From positions 4,469,933-4,513,066 of the forward strand of contig CAJFCJ010000005.1 in assembly GCA_904063045.1 (NCBI GenBank): a DNA stretch of 43,134 bases, in the 5' to 3' direction. The translations under genes and the position numbers were made by a program. The notes beneath the pieces are model-generated. The model was given only the letters and a program-made list of their open reading frames with translations, made no database searches and had not been told where the DNA came from. Of the stretch, positions 1 through 22,500 are shown piece by piece; the stretch's first letter is position 1; each line of letters begins with the position of its first letter. The stretch comes from Dimorphilus gyrociliatus (Eukaryota; Animalia; Annelida).

Positions 1-18
1 CCTAACCCTAACCTAACC

Positions 19-59
<41 letters not shown>

Positions 60-197
60 CCCTAACCCTAACCCTAACCCTAACCCTAACCCTAACCCCT
101 AACCCTAACCTAACCCTAACCCTAACCCTAACCCTAACCCTAACCCTAACCTAACCCTAACCCTAACCCTAACCCTAACCTAACCCTAACCCTAACC

Positions 198-238
<41 letters not shown>

Positions 239-350
239 CCCTAACCCTAACCCTAACCCTAACCCTAACCCTAACCCTAACCCTAACCTAACCCTAACCT
301 AACCCTAACCCTAACCTAACCCTAACCCTAACCCTAACCCTAACCCTAAC

Positions 351-387
<37 letters not shown>

Positions 388-457
388 TAACCCTAACCCT
401 AACCCTAACCCTAACCCTAACCCTAACCCTAACCTAACCCTAACCTAACCCTAACCT
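1..457 (+). repeat. Terminal telomeric array (CCCTAA)n, i.e. TTAGGG on the minus strand; left chromosome end
   Basis: Tandem CCCTAA from base 1 with scattered CCTAA, CCCTAAA and CCCCTAA variants; the C-rich strand at the 5' start is the orientation expected for a chromosome end. Confidence 0.98.
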
Positions 458-806
458 TGAAAATTTAAAAAAATTAAAAATTTTAAAAATGATTAATTGT
501 GAAATTAATAAAGTTGAAATGAATTTTTTTTATTTAATATCAATACAAGAAATTTATTTAAATAAGACAAAAATTCCATTAAAACATTTCACAGTAATGA
601 TTCAAAGACTTACAGATATTCAACGCATTGTAAGTGATCAATTTCAAATTTGTTGTTCAATTTCAAAATTACACTTGAGTGAAAAAGTTGAGTGCTTGAC
701 TAAAAAACAATTGTATCTAACTTGCAATGACGTCATCCATTTAAATATTTTAAAAGTTATAAGTTGGATTTTGTCAATTTTTGGCATCTGTGGAAACATA
801 ATTTGA
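458..806 (+). pseudogene. 5'- and 3'-truncated fragment of an LRR-containing GPCR (GRL101/LGR-like): last LRRs, hinge and TM1
   Basis: The frame reads ENLKKLKILKMINCEINKVE...SDQFQICC...C...LTCNDVIHLNILKVISWILSIFGICGNII. This is collinear with the paralog at 17143-18384 (TKLQYLDLSKCKINNIE...SDYFELCC...C...SSCGDLLQSRLIRILLWIINITSFIENIF). It ends where the repeat at 808 starts. Confidence 0.85.
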
Positions 807-807
807 A

Positions 808-1050
808 AGGTTACCCTCTAATTACTATAGAACATAGGGTCGAGATACTGGTAATAGAGTCTAAGGCTGCCAGTCAGCCATCCTCACCTACCACCGTTAA
901 CTCCAAAGCTCCATAGCTCAGCAACCGCTGGGCCGATTTCGTTCAAATTTTGCACAGTTGCTCAGTTCAATTAGATCTAGCACTGTGTAAAATTTCATAA
1001 CGATCGGAGCAAGTTGAAATTTCAATTTTCGTCAGTGGTCGACTTGCTTT
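808..1050 (+). mobile_element. Non-autonomous repeat with internal palindrome (DINE-1/Helentron-like or MITE-like), copy 1, CpG-rich
   Basis: Starts AGGTTACCCTCTAA and shares collinear blocks with 4921-5145. Imperfect inverted repeat CCGATTTCGTTCAAATTTTGCACA (933-956) / TGTGTAAAATTTCATAACGATCGG (984-1007). Family assignment is from recollection only. Confidence 0.55.
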
Positions 1051-1099
1051 ACTGACCACCAAATAGGTGATTTGTTGCGAGATAAAGTGTGGGATTGAC

Positions 1100-1922
1100 N
1101 NNNNNNNNNNNNNNNNNNNNNNNNNNNNNNNNNNNNNNNNNNNNNNNNNNNNNNNNNNNNNNNNNNNNNNNNNNNNNNNNNNNNNNNNNNNNNNNNNNNN
1201 NNNNNNNNNNNNNNNNNNNNNNNNNNNNNNNNNNNNNNNNNNNNNNNNNNNNNNNNNNNNNNNNNNNNNNNNNNNNNNNNNNNNNNNNNNNNNNNNNNNN
1301 NNNNNNNNNNNNNNNNNNNNNNNNNNNNNNNNNNNNNNNNNNNNNNNNNNNNNNNNNNNNNNNNNNNNNNNNNNNNNNNNNNNNNNNNNNNNNNNNNNNN
1401 NNNNNNNNNNNNNNNNNNNNNNNNNNNNNNNNNNNNNNNNNNNNNNNNNNNNNNNNNNNNNNNNNNNNNNNNNNNNNNNNNNNNNNNNNNNNNNNNNNNN
1501 NNNNNNNNNNNNNNNNNNNNNNNNNNNNNNNNNNNNNNNNNNNNNNNNNNNNNNNNNNNNNNNNNNNNNNNNNNNNNNNNNNNNNNNNNNNNNNNNNNNN
1601 NNNNNNNNNNNNNNNNNNNNNNNNNNNNNNNNNNNNNNNNNNNNNNNNNNNNNNNNNNNNNNNNNNNNNNNNNNNNNNNNNNNNNNNNNNNNNNNNNNNN
1701 NNNNNNNNNNNNNNNNNNNNNNNNNNNNNNNNNNNNNNNNNNNNNNNNNNNNNNNNNNNNNNNNNNNNNNNNNNNNNNNNNNNNNNNNNNNNNNNNNNNN
1801 NNNNNNNNNNNNNNNNNNNNNNNNNNNNNNNNNNNNNNNNNNNNNNNNNNNNNNNNNNNNNNNNNNNNNNNNNNNNNNNNNNNNNNNNNNNNNNNNNNNN
1901 NNNNNNNNNNNNNNNNNNNNNN
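1100..1922. other. Assembly gap (N run); may hide the gypsy LTR/gag
   Basis: Run of N. Confidence 1.
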
Positions 1923-2315
1923 TCATTTATTACAGAAAAAGAAATCAGGTTAATGGATTCTAAATTCATCAAGAAAGAAACCACTGCCTTACCAATCATC
2001 ACTTCAGCAGAGGGAAATGCTTTAAAGATAAAAGGAAAAGCAAAACTGAATATTCAATTTAATGGAAGAATTATGGAACAAGAATTTTTTATTATGGAAA
2101 AACTAGATATGGCTATAATACTTGGTTGTGATTTCCTAGAAACTGCTGGAGCTCTTATTGATTTTGCAACAAAACAAGTTTCTCTGCCATTGTTTATCAG
2201 AAAAGGACAACCAGTTAGAAAGTTTTTGCAATATAATGAAAATCACCAGACAAAATTTGGAAAAACAAGGCAGTGTAAAAAAAGTAACTGTTGGAATGAT
2301 GGGACAGTATGTTAA
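1923..2315 (+). pseudogene. Retroviral-type aspartic protease, C-terminal part
   Basis: ITSAEGNALKIKGKAKLNIQFNG...FFIMEKLDMAIILGCDFLETAGALIDF; the N-terminal DxG motif would lie in the gap. Confidence 0.85.
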
Positions 2316-3990
2316 AGATTCTGACATTCCATCTGAAGTTTCAGATAGAGTGGACTCAGAAATGGAAGTTACTGATCCAGATACTGGCTATGATACAAGC
2401 AACACTCATGGTTCAAGCATAGCTTATGAGGGATTCAATGGTTTTGATTCAGATAGCAATTATGGCACAGATGAAAGTTCCAGTACTTCTGAAAATTATG
2501 ATACAGAAACAAGTATTGAATCAGATCACAGCCCAGACTCAGATTTGGATATAATCAATGGTACAAGCTCATCTGAAGATGAAATTAGTGATTCAAATGA
2601 TTCTGATAATGGTTCACTGATTGTTATAGATTCATCTGAGGAAGAGTTTGATAACATAACTGAGCCTGATAATGGTTCAATGATTGTTATAGACTCATCT
2701 GAAGAAGAGACCAGTAACACAGTTGAGTCTGATAATGATTCAGTAATGGTTAAAGACTCATCTGATGAAGAGACTGGAAACACACCTGAGTCTGACAATG
2801 GCTCAGTTATTTTCATAAATTCATCTGAAGAAGAAATTGAAATTACATCTGAAGACTTAGCTACAGAAATGGAAATGAAACCACAATACATAGAATTAGA
2901 AGATGGAATAAGTATCAAAGTGGAAAAAGAACAAAAGAAACTTCCAGTAACTCCTGAAATAGAAGAATTACAGTTGGAAAGTATTGAATTTGAACATTTG
3001 TCTAATCAAAATGTACACAATAGTAATTCAAATACACTAGAAATTGACAATTATTTACATGTGTCCAAAAATAATCTTGACAAGAACAGAGAAGAATTAA
3101 AAGAAATGATAAAGAATTATGAAGACATCATTGCTACAAATCAAAATGACATTGGTTCACCAGATGTTCCACCAATGGCAATTGAATTATTGGAAGATAT
3201 AAAGCCTTTCAAACAAAGATCATGCAGATTGCCACCCAACAAACAGCAGGAATGCAGGGATCAATTAAATGGATTATTGGAAAATGGTCTAATTAGAGCA
3301 AGCAAAAGCCAATGGGCTTCACCCATTGTTTTTGTTAAAAAGAAAGAAGGAACATTAAGAATGTGTGTTGATTACAGAAAACTTAACAAGCAATCAAAAA
3401 AGAATTGCTACCCAATCCCACATCAGGAAAATTTATTTGATAAACTTGGAGGAGGACACAAGTATTTTTCTATATTAGATTTAACAAGTGCATTTCACCA
3501 CATCCCCATCAAGGAGGAGGACAAGGAGAAAACTGCTTTTATTACACCATTTGGTTTATTTGAATTCAAACCTTTTGGTTTGGCAAATGCACCTTCACAC
3601 TTCAGCTATATTATGGCAAATTTTGTTATTAATGGATTGGAAAACTTTTGCATTAATTATATGGATGATATTATAGTTTTTATCAAAACATTGGAAGAAC
3701 ACTTTGTAGCTCTACAGAAACTTATGGAAAGAATCAAGGAAAAAGACTTTAGAATTAAACTGAGCAAATGTGCATTCTTACAAGAATCAGTTCAATTCCT
3801 TGGTCATAGAATTACACAGAATGGTATTGAAACTGATCCTGAAAAGATTCAGAAAATAAAAGATGTCAAATTACCTATGTTTGCAAATACTCTGTTGAGT
3901 TTTGTGGCATTTTGTGGTTATTATAGAAGATTTGTTAAAGATTTTGCAAAAATCACAAAACCTTTGAGAGAATTATTAAAACTACATTGA
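2158..3990 (+). CDS. Gypsy reverse transcriptase preceded by a long Asp/Glu/Ser-rich spacer
   Basis: SQWASPIVFVKKKEGTLRMCVDYRKLN, LDLTSAFHHIP, TAFITPFG, PFGLANAP, YMDDI, KCAF, FLGH, YYRRFV. Confidence 0.95.
   Translation: MILQQNKFLCHCLSEKDNQLESFCNIMKITRQNLEKQGSVKKVTVGMMGQYVKDSDIPSEVSDRVDSEMEVTDPDTGYDTSNTHGSSIAYEGFNGFDSDSNYGTDESSSTSENYDTETSIESDHSPDSDLDIINGTSSSEDEISDSNDSDNGSLIVIDSSEEEFDNITEPDNGSMIVIDSSEEETSNTVESDNDSVMVKDSSDEETGNTPESDNGSVIFINSSEEEIEITSEDLATEMEMKPQYIELEDGISIKVEKEQKKLPVTPEIEELQLESIEFEHLSNQNVHNSNSNTLEIDNYLHVSKNNLDKNREELKEMIKNYEDIIATNQNDIGSPDVPPMAIELLEDIKPFKQRSCRLPPNKQQECRDQLNGLLENGLIRASKSQWASPIVFVKKKEGTLRMCVDYRKLNKQSKKNCYPIPHQENLFDKLGGGHKYFSILDLTSAFHHIPIKEEDKEKTAFITPFGLFEFKPFGLANAPSHFSYIMANFVINGLENFCINYMDDIIVFIKTLEEHFVALQKLMERIKEKDFRIKLSKCAFLQESVQFLGHRITQNGIETDPEKIQKIKDVKLPMFANTLLSFVAFCGYYRRFVKDFAKITKPLRELLKLH
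2539..2853 (+). repeat. 63-bp (21-aa) in-frame tandem repeat, ~5 units, xDNGS[LMV]IVIDSSEEE
   Basis: Units start at 2539 (degenerate), 2602, 2665, 2728 and 2791. Confidence 0.9.
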
Positions 3991-4365
3991 AATGGACAAA
4001 AGAAGCAGAGGAAGCTTATGTAAAAGAAGACCTTGTATGGTATCTAAATGCCTGTCAATCACTAATAGTAATCCCACAATCAACTCTAACCAACTTACTT
4101 GGACAAATTCATCAACATCACCTATTTGAGCACTATGGTTTAGACATAACAATTCACACTTTGGAGCAAGCTTTCTGGCACCCCAAGCTAAAGAAAACAA
4201 TTAAAGATCACATAAAGAGTTGTGAATTTTGTGAGCAGTTAAGAGCACCGGGCAACAAACATCTGTTGGTTGAAACACCTCACCCAACTTTACCAATGCA
4301 AAGAATAGCTATGGACATAAAGGGACCTCTGACTGGACATGATTCTTACAAGTATATACTTGTAT
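3987..4365 (+). pseudogene. RT connection fused to integrase zinc-binding domain and start of catalytic core
   Basis: KWTKEAEEAY then LIVIP...HQHHLFEHYG...FWHPKLKKTIKDHIKSCEFCEQ...PMQRIAMDIKGPL...YKYILV; truncated at a (TA)n tract. Confidence 0.88.
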
Positions 4366-4376
4366 ATATATATATA
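4363..4376. repeat. (TA)n microsatellite at the gypsy truncation point
   Basis: TATATATATATATA. Confidence 0.8.
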
Positions 4377-4496
4377 TTGTACATAACATATGTTAACATT
4401 TGTACTTCAACCAAACAGATGTCCCCACACTGTGCAACAATACAGGGCTCTACTAATGTCATGTGTATAAGCCAAAACTTGTAAACTTTTCCCATT

Positions 4497-4536
4497 TTTA
4501 CCTGAGGAAGGCTACTTACAGCCAAAACATTGTAAA
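4497..4536 (+). ncRNA. Decayed minimal type I hammerhead ribozyme of Penelope-like element type
   Basis: Stem I TTTAC/GTAAA, core CTGAGGA, stem II GGCT/AGCC, then CCAAAACATT where the consensus is CCGAAACGTT (two CpG-to-CpA changes). AATAAA follows ~10 nt downstream. Confidence 0.75.
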
Positions 4537-4634
4537 CGTTTTTTTTAAATAAAATAAACATTTTTAACTTACAGAAATATTAACTTCTTGAAAGAACTTA
4601 AGGTCAAAAGACTACTAAACAACAACAATTGTTA

Positions 4635-4800
4635 CCTAACCTTCAACTGGAACCCTAACCTAAAAAGGATACAAAAGGTTACATTCCACAATAAAAAGGA
4701 AAAGTTGCTACTAGCAGTTCCTATAAAATACAATCATCAAGACCTGATCTGGGAGTGTTTTGTGTGTGGCCTCAACCCAACCAAACCTAAACCCTAACCC
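4635..4800 (+). repeat. Degenerate interstitial telomere-like motifs
   Basis: CCTAACC and AACCCTAACCTAA (4635-4663); AACCCAACCAAACCTAAACCCTAACCC (4774-4800). Confidence 0.55.
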
Positions 4801-4920
4801 ATGCAAATAGGATTGGCCATATATGTACACAGGAAAGAACATAGAATTGAATCTAGGTCTTCCTTTGATACATTTTATGAGAGGCTACTAATAGATTGCT
4901 ATACCTGCAGTTACTTGAAC

Positions 4921-5145
4921 AGGTTACCCTCTAAATTGGTGTAGAACATCAGTGATGAATACCTAATCTTAAGGCTACAGCTGCCAAATATCAGGAGTAG
5001 GTGTAACAACCACTTGCGACCTGCGTCTTTTTCAAACCACCATAGCTCCTAAATTTTGTACATAGATTTGTTCGTATTGGGACTAACTCTGTACCAAATT
5101 TCATAGAGATTGGAGCAATTTGAAAATTTCAATAATTTTTTTGGT
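4921..5145 (+). mobile_element. Older, diverged copy 2 of the repeat at 808-1050
   Basis: Shares AGGTTACCCTCTAA, TAGAACAT, TAAGGCT, CCATAGCTC, AAATTTTGxACA and AAATTTCATAxxGATyGGAGCAAxTTGAAA in the same order. Confidence 0.6.
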
Positions 5146-5421
5146 CAACTCACAAGTGGAGGACACTTATATTCGACCTGTGGTGTACAACTTTGGTTAT
5201 ATTTTACATGCTTGAACTCTATTCTTTTATGCAACATATATATGTACATCTTAAAACCTACGCAAGAAAATGCTATAACATTGGCCAAACATAAGTCTGA
5301 TTAGTCAGCTTGAAGGCTCATCTTTAATTACCAATAAAGGTTTGGCCAAGTTATAATTTAATTAACTTACCTAGGGTGTGGCCAAATTATAATTCAATTA
5401 ACCTTCCTAAATGTTCAACCT

Positions 5422-5781
5422 TGTAACATCCTCTTACCAAAGAAAAATATGAACTACACATTTCTGCAACTGTAAAGTGATAATTGGATGTCAGAGGCAA
5501 ACCTCAAAGTATATAAATCCTCACTATTCTCATTTGGCATGCAGCTTCCATCTGGACCCAAGGACCTGGGAGAATCATCTGGAAACAACCTCCACTGGAA
5601 CCATCCATCTACTCCTGAACATTAGAAGACAGTTTGGTAATTTGGCAACCTGCTTTTACAAACTATCTACTCTGCTATCGAACTCTCATATTGTTACTTG
5701 CTTAAGTATTATTATTGTGAATAAACTGTTTTAATTTAAACATTTGTTTAAAGGTTCGAGTAGAACCAGTATTGTTATAAC
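5422..5781 (+). mobile_element. Possible solo LTR
   Basis: Begins TGTAAC, has a TATA-like GTATATAAA and AATAAA, ends GTTATAAC. There is no terminal CA, TSD or PBS, so support is weak. Confidence 0.25.
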
Positions 5782-6065
5782 TTGCAAATGTATAGATTTT
5801 GCCAGCAACAGCAGTAGAGTGAGTACATCAGGCCTGTCAATAATCAGTCTGGTGGTAATCATACTGCAGCCTTTCAACTCACTTGAAAAAGGGACAATTA
5901 GTCCCGAAATATTGTGAGGGTTTTAGCCAGATGACATTGTTAGTTGCTGCAGCACAGGTTCTCTTCACCCTTGTTGAGAATTTGTGATTGGGATACTGTT
6001 AGAGACACAGTGACAGCTTTGGCTGGGGAATTGCAACTTTAGATAGCAACTCCTCAATAGCTACA

Positions 6066-6175
6066 CCAACCCTTAACCAAATCTTGGTTGTAAGTGTGAG
6101 TGCACTTTTTGGGATTACCAGTCTGTACTGACTGTGCTAATCCCTAACCCCAAGACCCAACCCTTACCCTAACCC
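6066..6175 (+). repeat. Degenerate telomere-like motifs
   Basis: CCAACCCTTAACC and CCCTAACCCCAAGACCCAACCCTTACCCTAACCC. Confidence 0.45.
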
Positions 6176-6813
6176 ATTATCAATTCTTGTTAGCAACACA
6201 ATACAGTTTCCGTTTAATATTTGATAACACATCAAACATAATGGCTAAGTGCTGGTTGCATCTGAAAAAAAATTAATAACTCACAAAATGAAACTTTGGA
6301 TATTTCATACCTTGAAAACACTTAATATGACAGGTTTTAAAGCAAAGACAATATTTGCCTTTGATTTGGTTTTCAATGAATTCATCTTGACAAATATAAC
6401 ATGTATTGTCCATGTTTTTAAACTTGGGATAGTTTTCTAGAAAACTTGGGAAATAATTTATATTAACAAAATACCAGAAATTAGCAATTATCTATAGTAT
6501 ATACATTATTCAATAAGAGAAATCAAACAGTCAATTTTATGACAAATCATGCTTTGTAATTAAAGGTTTGTACAATAGTAAAAAAAAAAAATTTAAATAC
6601 ACCACATTAGGCAAAAAAGGTAGTATAAATTTATGTTAAATAAATCATTGACTGCTTATGAACAAATACTCCATTTTAACCTTAAAAAAACACTTTTTAT
6701 TAAAATTCCTTCTTACCTCAGCTTATTTTATCAAAAGTGTGAATTAAAAATCTTTTTATTACTATGAAGAGTTATCTAAAAGCTTTTTGTCACTTTGTAA
6801 ATTTTTTGTTTTT

Positions 6814-6838
6814 TTGTGGACATTTTCTGTCTGAACCC
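6814..6838 (+). mobile_element. Isolated right TIR of the MITE family at 11919-12125
   Basis: TTGTGGACATTTTCTGTC identical to 12103-12120. Confidence 0.65.
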
Positions 6839-7421
6839 ATAAATTTATAGATTAATAAATTGTAATATTAATGCTAGGTTATAAATAGCAATATTCTGTA
6901 TATAATTTAATAGGTTTTATTGCGGCACAATATGTATGCACTGCCCTATGCGAAACTAGGTCAATACTGCTTATCTCTATCAGTGCTATCTGCATAGTAC
7001 ATTACTGGTTCAATACTACTTCTCTATTGTAGGGTATAGCTGACGAATGTATGTGTACAAATCTTATATAGTGATTTTTAAATTTGAACAATTCATTCAG
7101 TTTTGTCAAAGTACAATCAGTGAAACAAGAACTTCACTTCCTTAAATTTTGTTATTTCTCCAAAACCTTTAGAACAGCTCAATACAAAATCAATATTTGC
7201 TGGTTTAATCATTGCTAGCAATGAAGGGTAATTGGTGGAAAGTAGCAGGAAGAACATTATTGATTGTAAAAAAGTTTTAGTGGTATGAAAAAAATTTTTT
7301 TTGTAATACCTTATTGTTTACCAAGATAATATTATATAAAGGGGCAGTAGCTACTGAATCAGGGCAGTTGAGTGTTATGTCTTGGAGCAGTTAAAAACAT
7401 TTCTTAACTATTTTAAACATA

Positions 7422-9403
7422 ATGGTAGGTTTGAAAAATAATAAAAATAAAAGAAAAAATGTTTCTTGTATTAGTAACCTTGGTGTTGTGTTTCTTTTAG
7501 TTAAAAGCTTGTGTTTTTGTTGGAGTGGCTACTTTAATTGCAGCTGCAATTGCAGGTTTAACTGTTGGTCTTTACTTTGGTTTGATCAAAGACAAGGGTA
7601 AGAGTTTGTGTAAAAATTTTATTTCAAATTTTTTATTTGACTGACTGATTGTTTCTTATTTTCTTGTAATTAGGAAAAAATGAAAATGCAATATACAAGA
7701 GTAAGTTGATTTTGATTTGAGTACATTATTGATTTAAAGGTAATATTTTACCTTTCTCAAATTTTAGCCACAGTTGAAGTAAACATGATTTTGCAAAAAC
7801 AGTATAGTTTAGCATACCGAGATGAAACATCAGATTCCTATAAACTTTTGTTGAAAGATATTCACAATGCTGTTAATGAAAGTTTGTGGACACCTGGATA
7901 TTCTCAACTAAACACTTTTTCTGGTATAAGAAGTCTAAGATGCTCCAGAGGCAGTATTGTTGCTGAATATATTGCTGTTTTTGAATCAAAAAAGAGACCT
8001 GTAGAGAAAATCAGCAAAAGTCATTTGATTGACAAATTTGAAAAATCAAAAATCAATAGATTTTCAAATTGGGAAAAGTTAAGATTAAAGAGTTATAAAA
8101 TTGGTAATGTTAATCACAATTTTCCACAAGAAACCTTAACAACAAAGTCATGGATGCAAACAAACAAACCTTCATTTACAACAAAGTCATGGAAGAAATC
8201 AACCAAACCCTCATCTACAACCAAATCTTACATTGATAATGGTAACTTTTTGAAAAATATAAATAACAAACAGGCAGACTCTGATTTTTGACATGAACTT
8301 TTTTTAAGGTGCAAATCCACTAGGTGTATCTTGTGCAAAAGTATTGCCTAGAGTAAAAAGTAGAATTGTTAATGGTCAAGAAGAAAATATTGAAAATATT
8401 CCTTGGCAGGTTGAGTTCAATTTTTATCATTTTCAATTAATGTTCATTAAAACAAAAAATAATTGACAAAATAGGCTTTTTTGTATGTTAGAAGCAATGG
8501 GAAAAACTACTACTGCGGAGCAGTGATTATCCATCCATACTATGTATTATCAGCAGCCAGCTGTATTAAAGATACTAAGTGAGCAAATAGTGTTTTTTTT
8601 ATATTAAAAAACTGACCTTTAAATTGATAAAATCCTCTTTTCACAGAGTTAAACATTATTTAACCTTTGGAGCTGATGATCTTCAATGGACTTTTATAAA
8701 TATATTTCATGCTAAAAAAATTTGGATACATGAACATTATAATCCAAAGACTTTTGAAAATGATATTGTACTTTTGAGAGTTGACACAAAAATTAATTTT
8801 AATAAAAAAATTCAACCTATTTGCTTACCAGAAAGAGACTATGGAATAAATGAAGGGTTTCATTGCAAAACAAGTGGATTCGGTTCGACACGCACAATAA
8901 GTAATTTTCCAAAAGATTTATTATATCAAAAAAAAAGAATAAATGTGTTTTTTTTTCTCTATATTTATAAATCAGGAACAAATACCAAACTTTATTCAGC
9001 AGCTCAATACTTATTTTCAAAATCTTTGTGTGAAAACCACTTTAACCTAATAAAATATCCTGAGATGATATGTGCTGGAGGTTTTAAAGAGTTTTATCCA
9101 GGAATTCCATGCAGTGTAAATCTTAAATATCAGATATTATCTAAAATTCTAAATATATATTTGAATGCTAGGAGGATGAAGGAGGGCCTTTACATTGTAG
9201 AAAAGGAGATTATTGGAGACTTTTTGGGATAACAAGCTTTGGTTCGAAAGGATGCACTGGCAAAGTTTCTGTTTTTACCAGAGTGAGTTATTGTTTGTTT
9301 TTTAATATTTAAATTTTCTTTTCTTTGATTTTTTGAATAGGTCTCACATTATGTAAATTGGATTAAACAAAAGATTACTAATGATAATACAACAACTACT
9401 TGA
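7422..9403 (+). CDS. Type II transmembrane serine-protease-like protein (TM - SEA - Thr/Lys/Ser linker - trypsin domain), predicted catalytically inactive; multi-exon
   Basis: TM VFVGVATLIAAAIAGLTVGLYFGLI (exon ~7501-7598); SEA with RGSIVAEY (7785-8240); activation site KSR/IVNG, IPWQ, CGAVIIHPYYVLSAASC, NDIVLL, MICAG, EDEGGPL, WRLFGITSFG, VFTRVSHYVNWI; GT-AG introns; stop 9401-9403. The start codon is inferred. Confidence 0.85.
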
Positions 9404-10578
9404 AAGATAATTCACTTAATCAAGTCAATTATGTTTTTCCTTTTCTATAAAAATATCTCACCAAATATCAAATTTGTTTCAATTTCTTGATAAGAAATGA
9501 CCAAACTTATTTGATGATTTACTTTGTCAAGTTCATTAACAAGTACTAGCCTTTAGAATTCATTCTGAACAAAGTAATACCACTCTATTACATAAACAGT
9601 AGAGTTCTATCAAAAGAATGTGTATTGGGTAAATGAGTCCAATCATACAATACAGTTTAAAATATACAGATAGATATTGCCTATCTTATGGGTTTCTACT
9701 TATTTTGTTTTTCAAAGCCAGAACACAGAAAATAAAGGCAAAAATCTGGCAATATAAGTGAGTGATATTTTCCAAAAAAATTTCCATAATTAATTTCATC
9801 ATAATAACTGATGGGCTGTCCATTTGGGATTTGATTTGGAGGTCCTGATTATAAGCCTGGCCACCTTTCATTTTTTTTGTGTACTGCATTTTGGTTTATC
9901 TTTTACCATTTATAGCTCTTTAAACTTCTTTATGTTTAGAACAGTAGTAGGGATACAATTTAAAAGAGAAATTCTTGTGGCTTCTGATAGCTTCACCATT
10001 TTATTTTTACTTTGTGAACTGATAGATTACACACACATAAATGAACTTAAAATCTGGTTAAAAGTGACACTACTTAATGTTTAGGGTAAGTTTAGAAAGA
10101 GAAAAACTTAAAAAAAATTATTTTTTTGAGGCATAAAAAGGACTAATGTCTGGTATTGTATATATGAAAGTATGATGTATGATATATAAAAATCCTAACT
10201 TGTTACCAAATCTGAATGCTGGGATCGGAGGTAGAATAAGTAAGTGCAAGAAAAAAGGGGGTCGTCAAATTCAAAAAGAATAAAAATATTGGTCCCCAAA
10301 CCATTGTCCGGAATAATATGTCTCACAGTCAAATAAGAAAAAAACACATAAAAAAGTACACATTATAAAAACAAAAAAAATTATGTAAAAAGTTATGTAA
10401 ATACTATTTGATAGAAATTTCTATGTAGATCCAAGTTTCACCTAATAATTAATAGCTACAAAATTTTTAAAAAAATATTTCTTCATAAAGAAACACATAT
10501 TTAATGTTCTACCTATCAAAATTTACAGTGTCTGGATTTTTCAGTCCCTTACTTTATATACTGTATATATAGTATATA

Positions 10579-11150
10579 CAGTCAGCGACAGAAGTTTTCA
10601 TATATATAAAAAAAATGTTTTTTTGTAATTTTGAAGGATAGAATTATTTTCTCTTAAATAGAATTATGTTTAAAGGTTATTTATGTAATTTCATAAAATA
10701 TTTCTTTTTTTCACCTTTCTAGAACATTTTTTTGTTTTATTTTAGACAACAAGTATTTTTTCACAATAATCCTATATAATTTAAAACGCACCATAAGTAT
10801 CTGTATAAGGATGTTTTTTGTCTAAAAAACTTATAAAACATTCAAATTTTGAACAATTACCTTTTAGAAGACAATTCCTTAAAATTACTTTTTAAGATGA
10901 AGTATCATCCACAAATTAGAGAGTTGGCAAGATGAAAAAAATCAGAGATGACCTATGACAGGCTTTCAGTGGACCTGAATATCCCTAGGTCATCTCTGCA
11001 ATACATTTGTAGGGAGAGAAGGGAAAAACAACCTAAAAGAATGGGTAGACCTTAAGGTAAGTGAAAGAACAAAAAATCTTATAAAAAGAGAATGTGGAAG
11101 ACTACAAGAAAAAAAAGAGCTTGCAAGTGCAAGCAAAATAAAGAGAAATT
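10579..11150 (+). mobile_element. Tc1/mariner relic (candidate left TIR plus N-terminal HTH of transposase)
   Basis: TA|CAGTCAGCGACAGAAG at 10577. From 10897 the frame reads MKYHPQIRELAR*KKSEMTYDRLSVDLNIPRSSLQYICRERREKQPKRMGRP, then shifts to KVSERTKNLIKREC...ASASKIKRNL. Confidence 0.65.
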
Positions 11151-11430
11151 TAGTGGATATAATATGTTAAAACCTGAATGGAACAATCAGGAGAGGATAA
11201 GTGCTAACATTAGTGAATGCAAAAGACAGTGCGACATTGATAAAATGTGCAAGTTAGTATTTTACAGTTGAGTTGACATATTCTTAAATATTCTGTTTAA
11301 CTGCTAATTTTCCTCTAAACTAGGTCAATTGACTATATAGTTTCTTCCAGTTTATGTTATCAGATTATTGAAAATTCTATCAAATTGCAATTATTCAATT
11401 GAAGATAAGTTATTGTTAATGAAGGATACA

Positions 11431-11494
11431 GGAGAAAATGTCCACTGGAGAAAACATCCACTGGAGAAAATGTCCACAGGAGAAAATGTCCACT
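11431..11494 (+). repeat. 16-bp tandem repeat x4 (GGAGAAAATGTCCACT), subterminal repeat of the MULE
   Basis: Units at 11431, 11447, 11463 and 11479. Confidence 0.9.
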
Positions 11495-11675
11495 ATAGAA
11501 CTTCAAAGTAAGATATAAGATATTTGATAGATGGAGTTTTTAGAGCAATTTGACAGGAAAAAATGAATAATAAGAATTACAAATATTTAAATATTAATAT
11601 ATTGATTAAGTAAAAAAAAGCATTATAACAAGAATGATTAACAACAGTGTAACAACATTAAAGAATAAAGGTATT

Positions 11676-13623
11676 TTAAACTGGTGAATAAATGTCAGAA
11701 GCTTTATCAAGTAAGTCCAGGGAGGTAATTGAGGCAATTTCAAATTGTTCCCATAAGCTGAATATTTTGCTTTGAATATTCTGATATGCTTTTCTTTGCT
11801 GTCTACAAATTTTCTGTTCACTGAGTAATTTTTTATATAGCTTTATCAAATCAGCTTCTCTTTTCAGTTCATCTAAAAGCAAATAGAATGCAGTGTTAGA
11901 GCAAAGATTCTTGTTAAGTGGATGTGACAGAAAATGTCCACAAATTGGTGCTTTTACCCTAACCCTAACCCAGCCCTTAGCTGTACCTAACCTTTTCCAT
12001 TACCCCTAACCCTTAGAGGAGACCCTCCTAATTACAAATCAGTTGCTCTCTTCTTCTTCCTAACCATTTCTCAATCCAAATTTTTGTCTTGAAATTTCTC
12101 ATTTGTGGACATTTTCTGTCAACCCCTTGTTAAGCCTGTGATTTTTTGTAAAATAAAAAGAATATAGATGAGAATTTTTCTTATCTTCTCATTTAACCTG
12201 TCTCTTGTAATTGGATAGAATCTACTCACAATTTTCCATCACAAATACCATAATGTGTTCTGTCCTTATAGCCTCACCATATACAGACCATACCTCTGGT
12301 TTATAAAATCCATTTATCCATTGTGTCTCAATGTACTCTAATACAGACTTCATTTCAATAGCACTTATTTCTTTAATAGTCTTAAATGTTGGTTCTATCA
12401 GATCAGAGGGCAGGAATGGTAATGCCATTAATTTCTTCATGATTCTATATTCAGCTTTTTTCTCCTTGTACATCTTACATAATCCTAATTCCTGGAAATA
12501 AATATGTCAGTTCTATCTAGAGCTCACATGCTAAATTAAAGTATTACTTGAATCTTTCTGTATATTGCCTGTGTCCAGTGAAAAACACACCCTTTAATGT
12601 TTGCTTCAGGATAAGTGAATGATAGTGCTTTCCAAATAGCTTTTTCAAAGTCTACAACAACTTTTTTGGGGCTATGCCCATTTGTTAAATCTTGTATTGC
12701 CTGTTAATTTAACAAATTAGATTATTCAATTTAAAATGCAAAATTATTGTACCTTAAATAATTTCTTGTAGGCTGTCTTTCCCTTGGATCCCATAAAAGC
12801 AAAAGCCATTGGAATTTGTTTTATTTCTCCATTTTTTTTATAAATCCATGAATAGACAAAAGTTGATAAAAAGGGTCTTTCACACATTTAAATGTGCCAT
12901 CCATAAACCATATTTTGCCTTTAGATAATAATTCAATTTGCTTTGTGGTTGAAAATATTTGTATTCTATCATTCTCCATTTGTATATCCATTGTAAAAAA
13001 TCATCAGGAATAAATATTTTAGCCAAGTTGAAGTGAATACTTTGAGGTTCAGCTGGTCAAAACTTCTTTCTTGTCCAGTTTGCCAGTCTTGTACAATTAT
13101 CTAGAGATGGAATAACTTCACTAGAACTACAATGTTTCACCAGAACATCTTCAGCTAAACATTTTCCTGAACTACTGATATCTTTATTACAAGCATTTTT
13201 TAGTTCATTCCTAATCATTAATTTTTTTTCCAGATCAGGTACTCTTTCATGAGAATTGGATAACTTTCCAGGATAAAAACTGTTCCCATGCTGACTAACT
13301 GTTGCTGAACATTTATTTCTTTTGTTCCTAACACTGCATATCCAGAATGTTGTCTTGTTTCTTTTCTCTTTAATATTGTAGCAGAAATTGTTGAAAAGTA
13401 GCAAATCTTTTCCTTTCTGGCTCATTCCCTTTAAGATTTTAAATGAATAACTTTCTTTCTCACAATCTGATTTTGGAGAAACTATAAATGAAACTTCCAT
13501 CATATTATTTTGTTGAGCTGGAAGATCTTCATAGAAAAACATTGTTTGATTCCATATTACTGCCATTTGTATCATTTCCACTTGAATTTCCACAATGATT
13601 TTCACAAACAATAGTTTGCTCAT
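11676..13623 (-). pseudogene. FLYWCH + MULE DDE transposase pseudogene
   Basis: FLYWCH (SQKGKDLLLFNNFCY...TFWICS...KCSATV...H); WFMDGTFKCVKDPFYQLLSIHG; VVVDFEKAIW; KGCVFHWTQAIYRKIQ; LMALPFLP...YIETQWI...WSVY...RT; HRLNK...FYLLLDELKREA. In-frame TGA at 13057-13059, homopolymer frameshifts and a MITE insertion. Confidence 0.9.
11919..12125 (+). mobile_element. MITE with TIRs, 9-bp TSD (Mutator-type) and internal telomere-like repeats
   Basis: TIR GACAGAAAATGTCCACAAAT / ATTTGTGGACATTTTCTGTC; TSD CTTGTTAAG at 11910-11918 and 12126-12134; interior ACCCTAACCCTAACCC. Confidence 0.9.
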
Positions 13624-14890: not shown

Positions 14891-15088
14891 ATGTTGGAGT
14901 GTAAAATATGCTATAATAACTTGGCTAATACTCTGTTTCTCCCTTGTAGTCATTTACCAAGCTGCATAGACTGTACAATGAAACTGTCAAGATTAGAATG
15001 CACATGCTGTCAGAATTTGATTAAAGGATATGTCATTATAAAAAGCGATACTGATATATTGAACTTGAATTCTTCAAGTGAGAAATAA
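14891..15088 (+). CDS. C3HC4 RING-finger exon (IAP/MDM2-type C-terminal RING); upstream exons unresolved, possibly a pseudogene
   Basis: ECKICYNNLANTLFLPCSHLPSCIDCTMKLSRLECTCCQNLIKGYVII. Confidence 0.6.
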   Translation: MLECKICYNNLANTLFLPCSHLPSCIDCTMKLSRLECTCCQNLIKGYVIIKSDTDILNLNSSSEK

Positions 15089-15589
15089 ACAGGAATAAAC
15101 AGGAATATATGAATATGATGCCAAACTAGACTGTAGAATTTGTAGGGTTTGGATAATTTTCATTCTAAACTAAATTTAATTTTAACTTTTTTTCAGGTCA
15201 TTTTAGGATGAACATCAGGGTTAGGAATCACAAAATGAAAGAAGTTTTTTTGTTTTAGCTTTAAGTTATGTTATTAGTCTATTCAATATAAATTTGAATA
15301 AATGTTGGTCTAAGTACTTGAATTTGGACAGCTATTTCAAAACATATGTGTGAAAAACATTGTACCTCTCTTGGTAAATGATTGGAAAGGACAAATACAG
15401 TTTTGACGAACCAGAAATTCCTACAATTACAATTCAACAAAGTACAGATGTCATCTATCATTCCATGGGTAGATTTCATTTGTAAAAAAATGATTGATTT
15501 TTTTAAAAGTTAAATTTTTCATTTTTTAGTTATTACAATTGAAATTAAAATAGAGAGGCAATTGGCAGACTTATTAAGGAAGATCAAAC

Positions 15590-16554: not shown

Positions 16555-19500
16555 TTAACAAACAATATTTGTCTCTGCCTATCTCTATGAGCTCTAATGT
16601 CAGATAGAACATCTTTCAAAATATATAACAAAGGATTTACTACTGAATTCAATGGAAGCATGATAACAACTAGTGCAGTGTATACTTCATTTGATACAGT
16701 CAAATTGAAAAACACTGAATATACACCTTAAAAATGGAAAAAAGGGTAACTGGCTATATAATTTGCTAACAATACAACATTCAATTATATTTTTAAATAT
16801 TTTTAAAAACCTAAAAATGAAATCGGTAGCCAACACAAAATATTTGTTATAACAACTAAAAATGATCGAAACTTAATTTTGTTTTACAAGATCTTATATT
16901 TGGATTTCTCAAGAAATCTTTTTGATTTTACAGTTTCTCTCCATATTTTAAAATACAATCCACAAATCACTGTACATGCCAATCCAACAAAACAACCAAA
17001 AAATAGAAAAGAATAGAACCAGCCTTCCTTTTTGGTACTGGAGATATGTAATGTAAAACACACTGAACTTTTGGAGTAGTAGTCCTAAATATAACAGAAA
17101 ACTATGAAGAATAATTTTGACTATTTAAACTACATTTGTTTTTCATACATTATAAATAGGTAATGGGAGGATTGATATTAAAATTGACCATAGCCAGATG
17201 AAAATAATACTATACCTAAGAAATTTTTTATCAAAATCTTTCAATATAGGAGAATTAATTTTTTTATATCTTTCAATTGTTATAAACAATAAACTCAATG
17301 TAGATAATTGAATTGAGAAACTTGCAAAACTTCCAATTGTTGAACAAGTTATACTTCTTTTCCAAAAGAAGTCATTTTCAACATATTCTCCTCTGAACAC
17401 CAAGTCAGTTATTCCAATAGAAATGAAATATATTGCAATATTCAAATCTGCAAAAGCCAGACTCAAAAGGAAATTATTTCTCTTTCTTTTTGCTGACAAA
17501 ATAGTTTGATATAACAATGAGAAAATGTTTTCAATAAATGATGTAATATTAATTATCCATAAGAGAATACGTATCAATCTTGATTGTAATAAATCACCGC
17601 AAGAACTAAATAATGATTTGTTTGGTTGACAATGTTTAATATTTTTCAAATATTTCCTTGCAAAGCAACACAACTCGAAATAATCACTTGAAAGATTTAC
17701 AAGCATTTTTAAATTCTTCACTAGATATTTACTATTTTCCATATATAAAAAAGTTTTTTCTAGTAATAATAGCTCAAGAGAAAATAAGTCAGAAAATGAT
17801 TTGGTCTCAATGTTGTTGATTTTGCATTTGCTTAAATCAAGATATTGAAGTTTTGTACAATTAGCAAAATATTTATATGAAATTCTAGACAAATTTGTGT
17901 TTGCAAGAATAAGTTTTCTTAGATTTGGAAAAATCTGGAATGAAAACTTTCCCAAAAATAATTTATTACTTTTAAGATTTAAAACTTGAAGTTTTTTTAA
18001 TGAATCTTTTAATACATTTTGAAAAAATATTTTTCTATTGTTTTCAATATTAAGAGAGAATACATTAGGAAACACATTTATAATGTCTGATATATCTATT
18101 ATACTTAAAGATACTGTTAAATATACTACAGTGAAATATTGTCTTTGGAAGTATGTTTTAAAAGACATTTCAAACTGTGATATATGAACATTTTTCCAAT
18201 AATATAGCTCATTAACATTTAACCAGAGGTTAGTTGCCTGCTTAAAATCACACATTAAAGTGTGGAAGAACTCACATGTGCACCTGGTAGGACAATTGTT
18301 TGAACTTTTGCAAAACATCTCATCATTTCCCAGAAGGCAATCTACTATCTTATTACATATATCTGAAGTGGGAATATACAACAACTCATTTCTACATTTA
18401 AAAAATCCTCTTGGTATAAAGTTTTCTGGTTTTTATAGGTTTAATTTATAAAAATGGATTGAAAGATTACTGTTTAATAAAAAAATACCACAATCATCTT
18501 CATCATCATGTGCAGGACAATGAGAAACTCCATCACAAACTTGTTTAATTGAAATGCAATAACCCTTTGACCTACATAAATATTCACCAACATGGCATTT
18601 TGTAATATCACATTGATGAAACTCATAAGGAACATGAGTTTTTGTGAGTAAATTGCCCATTGAATTATACTCTAAATGACAATTTTTATGTTGTTTTACA
18701 TCCCTTTCTATTATTTGAGCACAGTTTTCCTCTAGCATAATGTCAGTTGAATGTTTTTCTATACAGGGTTGAATGCCTTCATCAGCTGAATTGCTGCAGT
18801 CATGGTGGAAATCACATGTTCTTTCTATTGGTATATGCATATTATCACACAAAAAAAGTTTTTTCCATCCTAAGAATAAGTCAAATGAAATGGTTAGAAA
18901 CATATTTTTTTAATTTCATTTTGATCCTACCAGTGGAATTTTTGTCTACTACTGAGCAAAAAAGTTCATCACTTTCATCAAAACAGTTAATTTCACTGTT
19001 GCAAAATTCACTTTTATTAATGCATTGTCCATTTTTACATCTAAAAACACAGAAACATCTGAAGAGTTTGTAATTAAAAAATAGTTTTTTAAGAATGCAC
19101 CTTTGACTTGAGTCACAATATTCCCATTCTATTGAAAAAAAATTCATGACAAAAGAGCATTTTATGTTGGTCTTACCACAATCTCTTTCATCCTCAGAGT
19201 TTGGACAATTTGGTATATGATCACAAACTTTTTTATAATTTATGTGAAAAGAATGGTTACAATAAAAGAGATCACTTTCTGGGCAATTTATTTCATCTTC
19301 CCCTAAAAAGCAATCAGTTTTTCCATCACATACATTTATCTCATTAATATATATCTCAATATTTGGGCATAAAAACATATTGCTTTCAACTGGACTCTTT
19401 GTTACATTTTTAATTTCCAATTGTTCACTCAGTGACTTTTTTGTTTTTGTAGTTTCAACTGTGAGGGCAAAATTCAGTTTGGTTTTGTATATAGATACTA

Positions 19501-22500
19501 AAATCTTTGAACCAGGAGAAAAAAACATGTTTAGGACTATTTCAATCAGTCAGACTGATTTAATAGGAACAATCCTAGACATTTTCTCCATGATCCTAGA
19601 ATAATTACTTGCTGCTTCAATGCACACAACTTTTGTTATATCAAGAGTGTGACACCCTGAAATGTCAATGCTATATGGTCTAAAAACAGTTGTATCTGAC
19701 CATCCTAAGTCAGATTGTAGCTTATTTGAATCTCCATATACAAAACAGTCTGTTAATTTTGTTGGTTTACTTGATTTTTCTGTACCACGTAGCAATGCTT
19801 TACAAAATCCAGGTACTCTACAATATTTTATTTAAAAAAATGACTAATAAAAGCAACTTATTAGTGAACTAACAAATTAGTATCATCAAAGCTTGTAAAA
19901 TCAAAAGGTATTCCATCCAAATGTAGTGTTATTGATCTATTTCTATGATTCTTTATAGTTTTCATTTCTAGTTTTTATTGTATGATCAAGTCTTATTCAT
20001 AGTTAAGACAAAAGACTAGTTTCATACTTCCTGGGAATATAGTCTTTTTTTTTAACATTGCTTTCAAAAGGGGAATATCATTTGTCAAAGAGAGAGTTCT
20101 TATTTTATCTAATGTATGCAAAAAACTGTAGCTTTCAGGTGATATAAAAGCAAGGGTACTATTGTTATTTATGCAAATTTTTTCACTCTGACTAATTGAT
20201 ACTTTCTTTTCAAGTGTCAAATGTAAAAAACATACATTCTTGTAGAGAAATGATTTTTCATTCTTACAAACTTTATAAACAAGAATAAATATTTAAACAT
20301 TTTGTTTTTGCCCAATGCCCACCTTTTTGACTACTATTAAGGTTACTGCTGCATGTTATAATTATTGGTGACTTTGGATACACACCCAGTTCTTTCATTG
20401 AAGATTCAAATATTCCTTTCACAAAGTCATCATCAATTTCTAAGGAGCAAGAAGATGAATCTCCAGATTTCAAACATTTCATTGATGCATAATAAAATCT
20501 TGTAACACTAAAAGGAAATGTAATTTTTGAAATGACACCATAATCAAAACCAAAAGATTGGCATATATTTATGATATTGTTAAATTTGAATGATTCAAAA
20601 TTTGGTTGATACCAAATATTCTTATAATAGATTTGTACATTTCCAGAGAATTCAATATAGGTGTGTGTTTGCCCAAAATTTAAAATGCTTTGGTCAATAC
20701 TAAAGAGTCTATAGTGATAGTCTGTCAAGAAAATTTTTAAATCATCTTTATATGAAGTTTACTGCAAAAAAGAAATGAACCTTTGTAATTATCTTCCTCA
20801 CATCTTACTGATAAGGTATATGCTTGCCTATCTAGGTCATTTAAGTTACAAGTGGTGAAGTCATCCGCAGACAAATCACAATTGTAGAAAGAAAATACTA
20901 CATTATGTAAATGAAACACCTTTCTGTAAGTGCAGTCAGCTTGTCTCTGTAATAACAAGATTTTTTGTTTATGGAAAAAATCAACAGCATAAGCAAGCCT
21001 TCACCAGCTGCCATGAATGTATTATTTGAAATATAGGATATACTGTTTTATTTAAAGTTGCACACAAAGATTTAGCAACTTTATCACCATTTTCAGTCCT
21101 TTGAAATGTCAAAGGCAACATTCCCAACTTTTTAGAATAAAACACAAACATTGTGCCAAAAGGTAAAGAATCCTCATAAACATATTTTTGCATACTTTTC
21201 AGCATTGGAACAACTTTTACATCTGAAGGAAAAAAAACTAAGTTTTCTCTGTTAATATGATTAGTATTATTACCTTTTAATTCAGGGTAAAAACAATACA
21301 ATCTGATTAAGTCTGCTTTGTTAGTTTGTGGAAGTTGATTGATCTTTTTAAAAGTTAAATTTTTGAAAGGAACAACAAAATATTCTCTGGAATATTCAAA
21401 ATCACTGTCACCATAAAATTGTGCCTTTTCACACACATGATTGCGCTTTTCAGCATTTTTTATATACACCTGAAATGATGCTTTATTCAATCTCCTGAAA
21501 ATTGGATACTGATTAGTCTTTGCATTGTCTGTACCAAATTTACCAGTGAAAATAACTGAAGCATATAAAACAGTATAAAAATGCTAGTCATTGCTTTTAA
21601 CTTGAGATACTAAAGTGTTAATGACACTTACATGGTACATCAATTTTAAAACATTTTATACAGCTGAGGTGTCTTTTATAATCAAAATGTGTGACTTTAT
21701 GCCTATGGAAATAATCTTTTTTGAACATTTTCAGTGATTAAAAGAAATCCTATTAATTAGCTATTAATCTGTGCAGAGTCATCTACTATCTATTTTTTTT
21801 GTGTTAATTTCTAAACTCTAAAACAGCCCCTAGCAAAGTTTTCCACTAAAAATTGCAGAGTCAATTCATCTTGCCATACTTGATATTTTGAGACTGGGCA
21901 GTTGACATCAAAAATAAACCATTACTCTAAACCTATGAAAATTATCTTTTTAAGTATTACAAATGGGAGGTCAGCACAAAATACAAAACACAAATTAAGG
22001 CTAGATTTTTGACTGAAAATGGCAAAGCGAAAGTCTTGTTTGGGAGGGTTTCAACTAACAATTAGGGTAAGAAGATTATATGGGAACAAGACTTGGGTGT
22101 GGGTAAATGCAATAATTTGTGGACATTTACAGTTGCATCCTGCCAATATCAAGACTACATTTTATTTGTTTTATTCATAGAAGGTTTGGAGGAATTCTTC
22201 TAAGGGGTCAGAGCTTAAAGTAGAATGTGGAAAACTTATAGGGTTTGGAAAACTTTTGTTTTGATTTTCTTAGGTCATGCAGGACTGAACTGAGGGTTAG
22301 AAAGTACTAAATTTAGAGAATCTTGTTAGCTGATGGAATTAGCATTAGTGTAAAATATCAAAAAATAGGATGTTTTCTCCCATAAGACATTTTTAGAGTA
22401 GGTCAAATTCTTTCATTAAAAAAATTGTTTTTTACATACACTGCCACTCTGTCCTCAACAAATTGTAGATAAACTGTACCATTTAGTTCTGTAAAATGTT

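What the first reader, a model, noticed from the sequence alone, without database searches (positions are those of the whole stretch)
441..806. Telomere added directly inside a GPCR coding exon (healed chromosome break, possibly programmed)
Seen: the array passes with no subtelomeric spacer into coding sequence. The junction ...CCTAACCTT GAA AAT TTA reads in frame as P-N-L-E-N-L-K-K-L-K-I-L, an LRR, so the last telomere-like bases may belong to the gene. The fragment is collinear with the LRR-hinge-TM1 of the receptor at 17143-18384 but clearly diverged, so it is a different paralog that has lost its 5' part. Established: telomerase heals breaks at short template-matching seeds, and nematodes and ciliates do this during programmed DNA elimination. 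Inference: this end is a de novo healed break; it may be a fixed terminal deletion or a somatic break site.
Basis: partly seen in the sequence, partly recalled or inferred. Interest (0 to 1): 0.8.

Follow-up and report, generated by a model that had tools for sequence, protein, structure and literature searches.

The report
Telomere repeats capping a receptor-gene relic
A clean run of chromosome-tip repeats is joined, with no spacer, to a 343-base leftover of a hormone-receptor-type gene in the small annelid Dimorphilus gyrociliatus, which looks like an ordinary inherited chromosome break sealed by telomerase; nothing suggests a programmed break, and the repeats are not shown to lie at a real chromosome end.

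Summary
The sequence facts hold. Positions 1-456 are 77 CCCTAA units. Its only variants are one-base run-length changes, with no substitutions. The array passes at 457-459 straight into an open 114-codon frame. That frame aligns colinearly with the last LRR, the cysteine hinge and the start of TM1 of LDLa-LRR-7TM (LGR-type) receptors: 23-27% identity to the paralogue at 17146-18384 (minus strand) and 44% to the best library match.

The relic is also broken on its right side. At 801/802 it runs into a 5'-truncated copy of a high-copy repeat, and an N gap follows at 1100-1922. Short-read contigs support 533-1095. One contig stops about 31 letters into the array, as a 31-mer graph would at a telomere junction. 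The tool masked the junction letters themselves.

No second copy of at least 90% identity and no close intact gene was found. Best reading (0.55): telomerase healed a germline break inside a young, now dead receptor paralogue, as at Plasmodium var-gene ends.

Two cautions apply. The scan's index places other findings 22-40 kb before the window start, so the array is internal to the scaffold as assembled. The 1.1-kb contig is tied to its neighbours only by a gap. Programmed elimination has no support. Other first-reader notes report broken GPCR/LRR genes next to telomere repeats elsewhere in this genome.

The parts
1..456 (+). (CCCTAA)n telomere-type array of 77 units. It runs to the first letter of the window, so its true length and what lies beyond it are unknown.
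   Evidence: Only homopolymer-length variants and no substitutions, which fits a telomerase-made array read with long-read indel errors.
457..459 (+). Junction: TT at 457-458 are the first letters that cannot be telomeric, and G459 starts the GAA codon.
   Evidence: X3 contig record 4 has 64 letters left of 492, which is 31 letters left of 459. That is the exact stopping point expected for a 31-mer graph if everything left of T458 is telomere repeat (inferred from coordinates, the letters were not shown).
459..801 (+). Relic of an LGR-type (LDLa-LRR-7TM) receptor exon: last LRR, cysteine hinge and the first ~18 residues of TM1. It reads away from the array.
   Evidence: Open frame. No Pfam hit on its own. 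Single-copy depth in X3, with one contig of at least 90% identity.
802..1099 (.). 5'-truncated copy of a high-copy non-coding repeat family. The TGA at 804-806 that closes the frame belongs to it.
   Evidence: X3 depth is 5,000-19,000 against 126 for the relic. Other copies carry a different flank left of 802 that resembles window 4900-4922. A diverged second copy lies at about 4895-5200.
1100..1922 (.). 823-N scaffold gap. The link between the 1.1-kb telomere contig and the rest of the window rests on it.
   Evidence: X1 and X2 contigs run on for 318 and 234 letters past 1095 with letters that differ from window 1096-1099.
1923..4484 (+). Ty3/gypsy pol fragment (protease, RT, integrase zinc-binding domain), cut at both ends.
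   Evidence: 79% aa identity to D. gyrociliatus DgyrCDS14407 and 86-89% nt identity to CAJFCJ010000036.1.
17146..19528 (-). Neighbouring LDLa-LRR-7TM receptor paralogue used as the reference.
   Evidence: Pfam Ldl_recept_a, LRR_8 and 7tm_1. 23-27% identity to the relic.

Best explanation
A double-strand break fell inside the large LRR-hinge-7TM exon of a young LGR-type receptor paralogue. The piece carrying the promoter, the LDLa modules and the first LRRs was lost. Telomerase extended the exposed 3' end (bottom strand ...TTTTCAA) with TTAGGG repeats, which is de novo telomere addition or chromosome healing. The event is germline and appears fixed in the sequenced culture. The same paralogue is also broken at TM1 by a recent junction with a truncated high-copy repeat, so what remains is a non-functional 343-nt relic. 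Shown: the direct junction, the orientation, the purity of the array, the family membership of the relic, its intact frame, and short-read support for 533-1095. Inferred: that telomerase made the junction, that the lost part lay distal, and that the array is or was a chromosome end.
For: The array has 77 units and no substitutions. It is fused without spacer to a frame that aligns colinearly to family members across LRR, hinge and TM1. The CCCTAA orientation on the strand that reads into the relic is the one expected for a healed left end. The frame is stop-free, with 0 of 100,000 shuffles stop-free. The adjoining repeat copy differs from the high-depth family contigs at only 2 of ~300 positions (903, 920), so the breakage is young. 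X1 and X2 contigs bridge relic and repeat. The X3 contig ends 31 letters into the array and shows no competing branch, at depth 126 against 124.6 for a locus-specific repeat variant. No other copy of at least 90% identity lies on 506-620 in X3. The best library relative is 44% identical, and there are no near-identical short proteins. The first 7 kb behind the array is transposon debris and genes start at about 7.8 kb, as in a subtelomere. The same anatomy is the accepted hallmark of healing at Plasmodium var-gene ends (PMC5550746).
Against: The scaffold continues for at least 40 kb before the window start and carries receptor genes of the same family there, so the array is not terminal in the assembly. 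The telomere contig is only 1.1 kb long and is tied to the rest by an N gap. The assembly pipeline (HaploMerger2, SSPACE-LongRead; PMC7854359) can make false joins. The junction letters 437-491 were masked by the reads tool. Homology to the telomerase template at the junction is at most 1-3 nt and is blurred by homopolymer errors. No unbroken progenitor was found to prove that sequence was lost. X3 continues differently after 803 (unexplained).
Confidence: 0.55

Rival explanations
1. True interstitial telomeric array. Telomerase (or capture of a telomere) filled a break inside the receptor cluster and the other side was rejoined, or a once-terminal healed end was later buried by a fusion, a translocation or retroelement additions. 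The junction at 457-459 would still be telomerase-made, but the site is no longer a chromosome end.
For: Same-piece findings lie 22-40 kb before the window start and are LDLa-LRR receptors, so the family sits on both sides. Other notes of this scan describe buried telomere tracts and Penelope-like additions onto telomeres in this genome (unverified). SSPACE-LongRead needs several long reads to place a small contig between two others (my knowledge of the program; PMC7854359 names it).
Against: Seventy-seven units without one substitution is not what an old internal tract looks like. Short telomerase repair insertions are usually far shorter (own knowledge). Upstream sequence could not be read. 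Small repeat-rich contigs are easily misplaced.
Confidence: 0.22
2. Telomere-primed retro-copy. A reverse transcriptase copying the repeat element's RNA onto a chromosome end switched template at element position ~802 to a receptor mRNA and copied 343 nt of it. Telomerase then capped the new end. The relic would be a retro-copied piece, not a broken resident gene.
For: Relic and truncated repeat are joined head to tail. The repeat is 5'-truncated exactly at the joint. In X1 another copy of the same repeat starts at 818 directly behind degenerate telomere-like letters. Notes of this scan report telomere-attached retroelements in this genome (unverified).
Against: A young retro-copy needs a near-identical parent gene. 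No second copy of at least 90% identity is present in the 126x run, and the best relative is 44% identical. The repeat has no recognised reverse transcriptase or ribozyme, and Rfam found nothing in 1-12000. Its strand and class are unknown.
Confidence: 0.08
3. Assembly artefact: a chimeric long read or a contig-end error joined telomere repeats to an internal relic that lies elsewhere.
For: The array is full of uncorrected indels. The contig is tiny and flanked by a gap. Window letters 1096-1099 and 1026 disagree with all short-read contigs.
Against: The X3 short-read contig carries 31 letters left of 459 and stops there, as expected only if reads run from the relic into telomere repeats. X1 and X2 confirm 533-1095.
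Confidence: 0.07
4. Programmed or somatic chromosome breakage with telomere addition, as in ascarid nematodes or ciliates, with an intact germline copy.
For: Only the bare anatomy (telomere inside a gene), plus scan notes of other broken GPCR/LRR genes beside telomere repeats in this genome (unverified).
Against: A whole-animal run shows one junction at single-copy depth and no contig that continues the exon leftwards. No intact copy appears in two protein searches. The relic is also dead on its 3' side. No paper links DNA elimination to annelids. Contigs cannot exclude a rare germline-only form.
Confidence: 0.03

Closest known systems
Telomere healing (de novo telomere addition) inside subtelomeric multigene-family members, e.g. 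truncated var genes at Plasmodium falciparum chromosome ends (PMC5550746)
   Same: Telomere repeats are fused directly into the coding region of a member of a clustered receptor-like gene family. No subtelomeric repeat lies between them. The result is a pseudogene.
   Different: This is an animal germline rather than a cultured haploid parasite. The terminal position is not shown. No unbroken reference copy is available. The relic is additionally cut by a transposon-like repeat.
Short interstitial telomeric sequences inserted at double-strand-break repair sites in vertebrate genomes (own knowledge; a scan note reports such scars in this genome)
   Same: Telomerase-type repeats abut unrelated unique DNA inside an assembled scaffold.
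   Different: Those tracts are short and are flanked by both halves of the broken sequence. Here there are at least 77 pure units, and the upstream half of the exon has not been seen.
Chromosome breakage regions of programmed DNA elimination (Ascaris, Parascaris, ciliates)
   Same: New telomeres are added to non-telomeric DNA with little or no seed homology.
   Different: Those sites show heterogeneous addition points, a germline-soma difference and an intact germline sequence. None of these is seen here, and the process is not known in annelids.
Athena/Terminon-type telomere-attached Penelope-like elements
   Same: Truncated repeats lie directly behind telomere-type tracts in the same genome (X1 record 2; scan notes).
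   Different: No reverse transcriptase, ribozyme or reverse-telomere tail belongs to the 459-1099 unit. The sequence behind the array is a host receptor exon.

Membership tests
Chromosome healing junction (de novo telomere addition) | Species telomere repeat in the orientation that extends the 3' end of the retained fragment | tested here: met
   CCCTAA lies on the strand that reads into the relic, so the bottom strand ends ...TTTTCAA followed by GGTTAGGG....
Chromosome healing junction (de novo telomere addition) | Direct fusion to unique, non-subtelomeric sequence | tested here: met
   The array ends at 456 and the exon homology starts at 459. The relic is at single-copy depth.
Chromosome healing junction (de novo telomere addition) | The array is the physical end of a chromosome | not testable with these tools
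   The window starts inside or at the array. The scan index shows the scaffold continuing at least 40 kb upstream.
Chromosome healing junction (de novo telomere addition) | An unbroken progenitor or allele shows that sequence distal to the junction was lost | tested here: not met
   No copy of at least 90% identity in X3. Best representative 44%. No short near-identical proteins. No other piece of the gene in the window. Loss is inferred only from family colinearity.
Chromosome healing junction (de novo telomere addition) | Short match to the telomerase template at the addition point | tested here: inconclusive
   At most A or AGG (1-3 nt). The unit next to the junction is a 5-mer variant that may be a read error.
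Programmed DNA elimination break site | Intact germline sequence across the site and a germline-soma difference | tested here: inconclusive
   The only runs served are contigs of whole-animal libraries. No alternative leftward continuation was seen, but contigs drop rare forms.
Programmed DNA elimination break site | Heterogeneous telomere addition points within a break region | tested here: inconclusive
   One contig at full single-copy depth reaches the junction. The junction letters were masked.
LGR / relaxin-receptor-like LDLa-LRR-7TM GPCR | LRR ectodomain, cysteine hinge and rhodopsin-type 7TM in one chain | tested here: inconclusive
   The relic has no Pfam hit of its own. By alignment it holds one LRR, the hinge cysteines and the start of TM1 of a family whose intact members carry LRR_8 and 7tm_1. 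It is a fragment of such a gene, not a receptor.
Interstitial telomeric sequence (old) | Degenerate repeats with substitutions | tested here: not met
   0 substitutions in 77 units.
Athena/Terminon-like telomere-primed retroelement module | Penelope-type RT or hammerhead ribozyme, with a reverse-telomere tail belonging to the unit | tested here: not met
   No Rfam family at E<=0.1 in 1-12000. 802-1099 has no long ORF. The only RT nearby is a gypsy pol beyond the gap.

The most novel reading that the evidence does not exclude
The junction marks a site where this annelid breaks a chromosome and adds a new telomere in somatic cells, keeping an intact receptor gene only in the germline. That would be the first programmed DNA elimination in Annelida. 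A milder version is that LGR-type receptor clusters sit at D. gyrociliatus chromosome ends and are repeatedly pruned by break-and-heal events, as antigen gene families are in Plasmodium.
Probability: 0.03. Interest if true: 0.9.

Novelty: new member of a known kind. Interest (0 to 1): 0.25.

Why it matters
If the reading holds, this is a datable example of a germline terminal deletion sealed by telomerase in a spiralian. It would show that a rapidly diversifying receptor family loses members through end breakage. It also bears on assembly quality: a pure telomere array inside a scaffold marks either a false join or a buried former end, and each would change how the neighbouring receptor cluster is mapped. 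It opens no long-standing question by itself.

Tried and rejected
I tried several ways to read upstream of the window start, and all failed.
- Exact-product look-ups of six window ORFs found nothing on record.
- Ten further ORFs are not in the collection.
- The three homologue searches returned no window-encoded annotated protein, so I could not fetch the NCBI record that holds this window.
- The search of earlier findings does not accept places before the window.

Other checks that led nowhere or argued against an idea:
- Palindromic (hairpin) scaffold centred on the array: rejected, because the notes upstream describe different genes from those at mirrored window positions.
- The repeat at 802-1099 as the 5' LTR of the gypsy element: rejected. 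The only related copy (4895-5200) is 73% alike and no LTR pair exists.
- The repeat as a tRNA-derived SINE: no tRNA-like gene was found.
- The rest of the broken receptor elsewhere in the window: absent.
- Run X5, an independent study, holds only short 90%-like bits, so it is uninformative.
- The MAFFT placement of the telomere-encoded P-N under a conserved P-N column far upstream is an alignment artefact.

Full report
**What is there.** The window opens with a CCCTAA array that TRF scores as 77 copies at 1-456. A 12-letter telomere probe matches 64 times, against 0.07 expected by chance. Parsed unit by unit, the array holds 61 CCCTAA, 12 CCTAA, 3 CCCTAAA and 1 CCCCTAA. Every variant is a one-base change in the length of a C or A run, and there is not one substitution. 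That is the error pattern of unpolished long reads laid over a perfect array. It is not the pattern of an old, decaying internal tract.

**The junction and the frame.** The array ends at 456. TT at 457-458 are the first letters that cannot be telomeric. From 459 to 801 one frame is open for 114 codons, while the other five frames carry 6-18 stops. None of 100,000 shuffles of this 22% G+C stretch stays open.

**What the frame encodes.**
- It aligns colinearly with residues 173-288 of the minus-strand ORF 17146-18384 (23% identity, E 2e-9; 27% by tblastn). That ORF carries Pfam LRR_8 and 7tm_1, and LDLa exons lie upstream of it.
- An exhaustive profile-free search of 1.84 billion representatives gave 80 hits. 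Nearly all are 300-450-residue products with the same layout. The best is 44% identical over residues 4-118.
- In an eight-sequence alignment the relic keeps the invariant F, CC, C, C, W and N of the hinge and the start of TM1.

**The right-hand break.** Homology stops at 801. From 802 the sequence is a G+C-richer non-coding repeat, and this repeat supplies the TGA at 804-806.
- In run X3 this repeat is covered at word depth 5,000-19,000, against 126 for the relic, so it has roughly 40-150 copies.
- Other copies carry a different flank left of 802. That flank resembles window 4900-4922, just before a diverged second copy at about 4895-5200. The family therefore extends further 5', and the copy at the relic is truncated exactly at the joint.
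- This copy differs from the high-depth family contigs at only two positions (903, 920), so the joint is young.
- No further piece of the receptor occurs anywhere in the window.
- An 823-N gap follows at 1100-1922, and then a gypsy pol fragment cut at both ends.
- Genes start at about 7.8 kb with a SEA plus trypsin gene, followed by a FLYWCH ORF at 13 kb and the receptor paralogue at 17-19.5 kb.

**Is it real DNA?** Four runs of one 2020 study hold the stretch, and one 2024 run holds only scraps. All are served as 31-mer contigs.
- X1 (881 nt) and X2 (780 nt) bridge relic and repeat from 533/550 to 1095. They run on for 318 and 234 letters into the gap, with letters that differ from window 1096-1099.
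- The tool masked 437-491 as repeat, so the junction letters were not displayed. It did not call them human-like.
- The X3 contig over the relic (598 nt, depth 126.4) is laid from its letter 65 at window position 492. It therefore has 33 letters for 459-491 and exactly 31 more. A 31-mer graph stops at precisely that point if everything left of T458 is shared telomere repeat.
- No competing leftward branch cut the contig at 459. I take this as good indirect evidence for the junction, and evidence against a common intact allele.
- Depth 126.4 equals that of a locus-specific repeat variant contig (124.6). Only one contig of at least 90% likeness lies on 506-620. So there is no second near-identical copy in that library.
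- A word-indexed search found no near-identical protein of 65-206 residues.

**An unexplained point.** The bin depths at 782-827 are fully accounted for by that contig and three high-depth repeat contigs. X3 therefore seems to lack the window-type relic/repeat joint that X1 and X2 show. This could be a repeat-free allele, a different joint or a graph artefact. I could not read the letters.

**Which genome.**
- The gypsy pol is 79% identical to DgyrCDS14407 of Dimorphilus gyrociliatus, far above all other hits.
- A 25-kb stretch of D. gyrociliatus record CAJFCJ010000036.1 shares the gypsy at 86-89% nucleotide identity and a small inverted-repeat element (window 11920-12126) at 90-94%, with the same 29% G+C.
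- The RING/LRR ORF at 38.3-40.7 kb has its best named relatives in that species.

This agrees with what other agents of the scan wrote. The published assembly was built with PBcR, Quiver, Pilon, HaploMerger2 and SSPACE-LongRead (PMC7854359). That explains the variable N gaps and the unpolished array, and it warns of possible false joins. The paper does not mention telomeres.

**Is it a chromosome end?** I could not show that it is. The scan's index lists three findings of the same piece 22-40 kb before the window's start, all LDLa-LRR receptors, and none after the window's end. The array is therefore internal to the scaffold as assembled. Either it is longer than 456 nt and is cut by the window boundary, or it follows a gap. 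All attempts to fetch the record or the upstream DNA failed. The telomere-bearing contig is only 1.1 kb long, and most of it is repeat. Its placement on both sides could therefore be spurious. If it is not spurious, it implies long reads that cross the array.

**Explanation.** I favour chromosome healing (0.55). A break fell inside the exon, the distal part with the promoter, LDLa modules and first LRRs was lost, and telomerase extended the 3' end ...TTTTCAA. The orientation, the missing spacer, the purity of the array and the transposon-rich 7 kb behind it all fit. The same anatomy is the accepted hallmark of healing at Plasmodium var-gene ends (PMC5550746). The open frame and the young repeat joint say the paralogue died recently.

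The rivals are:
- a genuine interstitial array, that is a former end later buried or a break filled and rejoined (0.22);
- a telomere-primed chimeric retro-copy (0.08), weakened by the absence of a parent gene;
- an assembly chimera (0.07), weakened by the short-read contigs;
- programmed elimination (0.03).

For programmed elimination there is no positive evidence. I found no paper linking it to annelids. The relic is also dead on its other side, so no functional gene is being regulated by the break.

**Known or new.** Telomere healing of broken genes is well known. This would be one more case, in a spiralian germline and in a receptor family. First-reader notes of the scan report a broken GPCR and a broken LRR gene next to telomere repeats on other pieces of this genome (s1-082984, s1-081296; not checked by me). 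So the scan has met this kind of junction before. A survey of all ends might show recurrent pruning of this family, which would be the more interesting result.

Noticed in passing
Bin depths show no window-type relic/repeat joint in X3, although X1 and X2 bridge it. This may be a repeat-free allele or a different joint.
   Followed up: partly
window 818-856 (run X1 record 2): Another copy of the 802-1099 repeat family begins at position 818 directly behind degenerate telomere-like letters. Truncated copies of this family therefore also sit behind telomere-type tracts elsewhere.
   Followed up: no
window 1026 and 1096-1099: All three short-read runs read C, not T, at 1026. They also continue past 1095 with letters unlike the window's last four before the gap. 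These are probable assembly errors at a contig end.
   Followed up: no
window 11920-12126; L007 2344-2550 and 12150-12335: A small element with about 20-nt terminal inverted repeats (GACAGAAAATGTCCACAAAT) carries a degenerate CCCTAA-like tract inside. Copies at 90-94% identity lie in D. gyrociliatus CAJFCJ010000036.1. A 16-nt tandem repeat at 11431-11494 echoes the same motif. Some internal telomere-like tracts of this genome therefore travel inside a transposon.
   Followed up: partly
window 4630-4660, 4770-4800, 6140-6175: Short degenerate CCCTAA-like tracts, all in the same orientation as the terminal array, lie among transposon debris behind the truncated gypsy integrase. No Rfam hammerhead was found at E<=0.1 in 1-12000.
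   Followed up: partly
window 7785-9232 (+), 13057-13623 (-): The first host-type genes behind the array are a SEA-domain plus trypsin-like protease gene with short exons and a FLYWCH zinc-finger ORF.
   Followed up: no
window 38288-40675 (-): An intact 795-residue RING/LRR ORF has D. gyrociliatus paralogues at 37-42% identity. It is not itself in the protein collection at any length between 437 and 1391 residues, so it seems unannotated.
   Followed up: partly
L001-L006 (Logan contigs of SRR23372216, SRR23372228, SRR23372229 and SRR23372231): The closest relatives of the relic (44% aa, 70% nt over 199 nt) come from very AT-rich (22-24% G+C) contigs of an unnamed 2023 study. They share no transposons with the window. 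They are probably from a related worm with the same expanded receptor family.
   Followed up: partly
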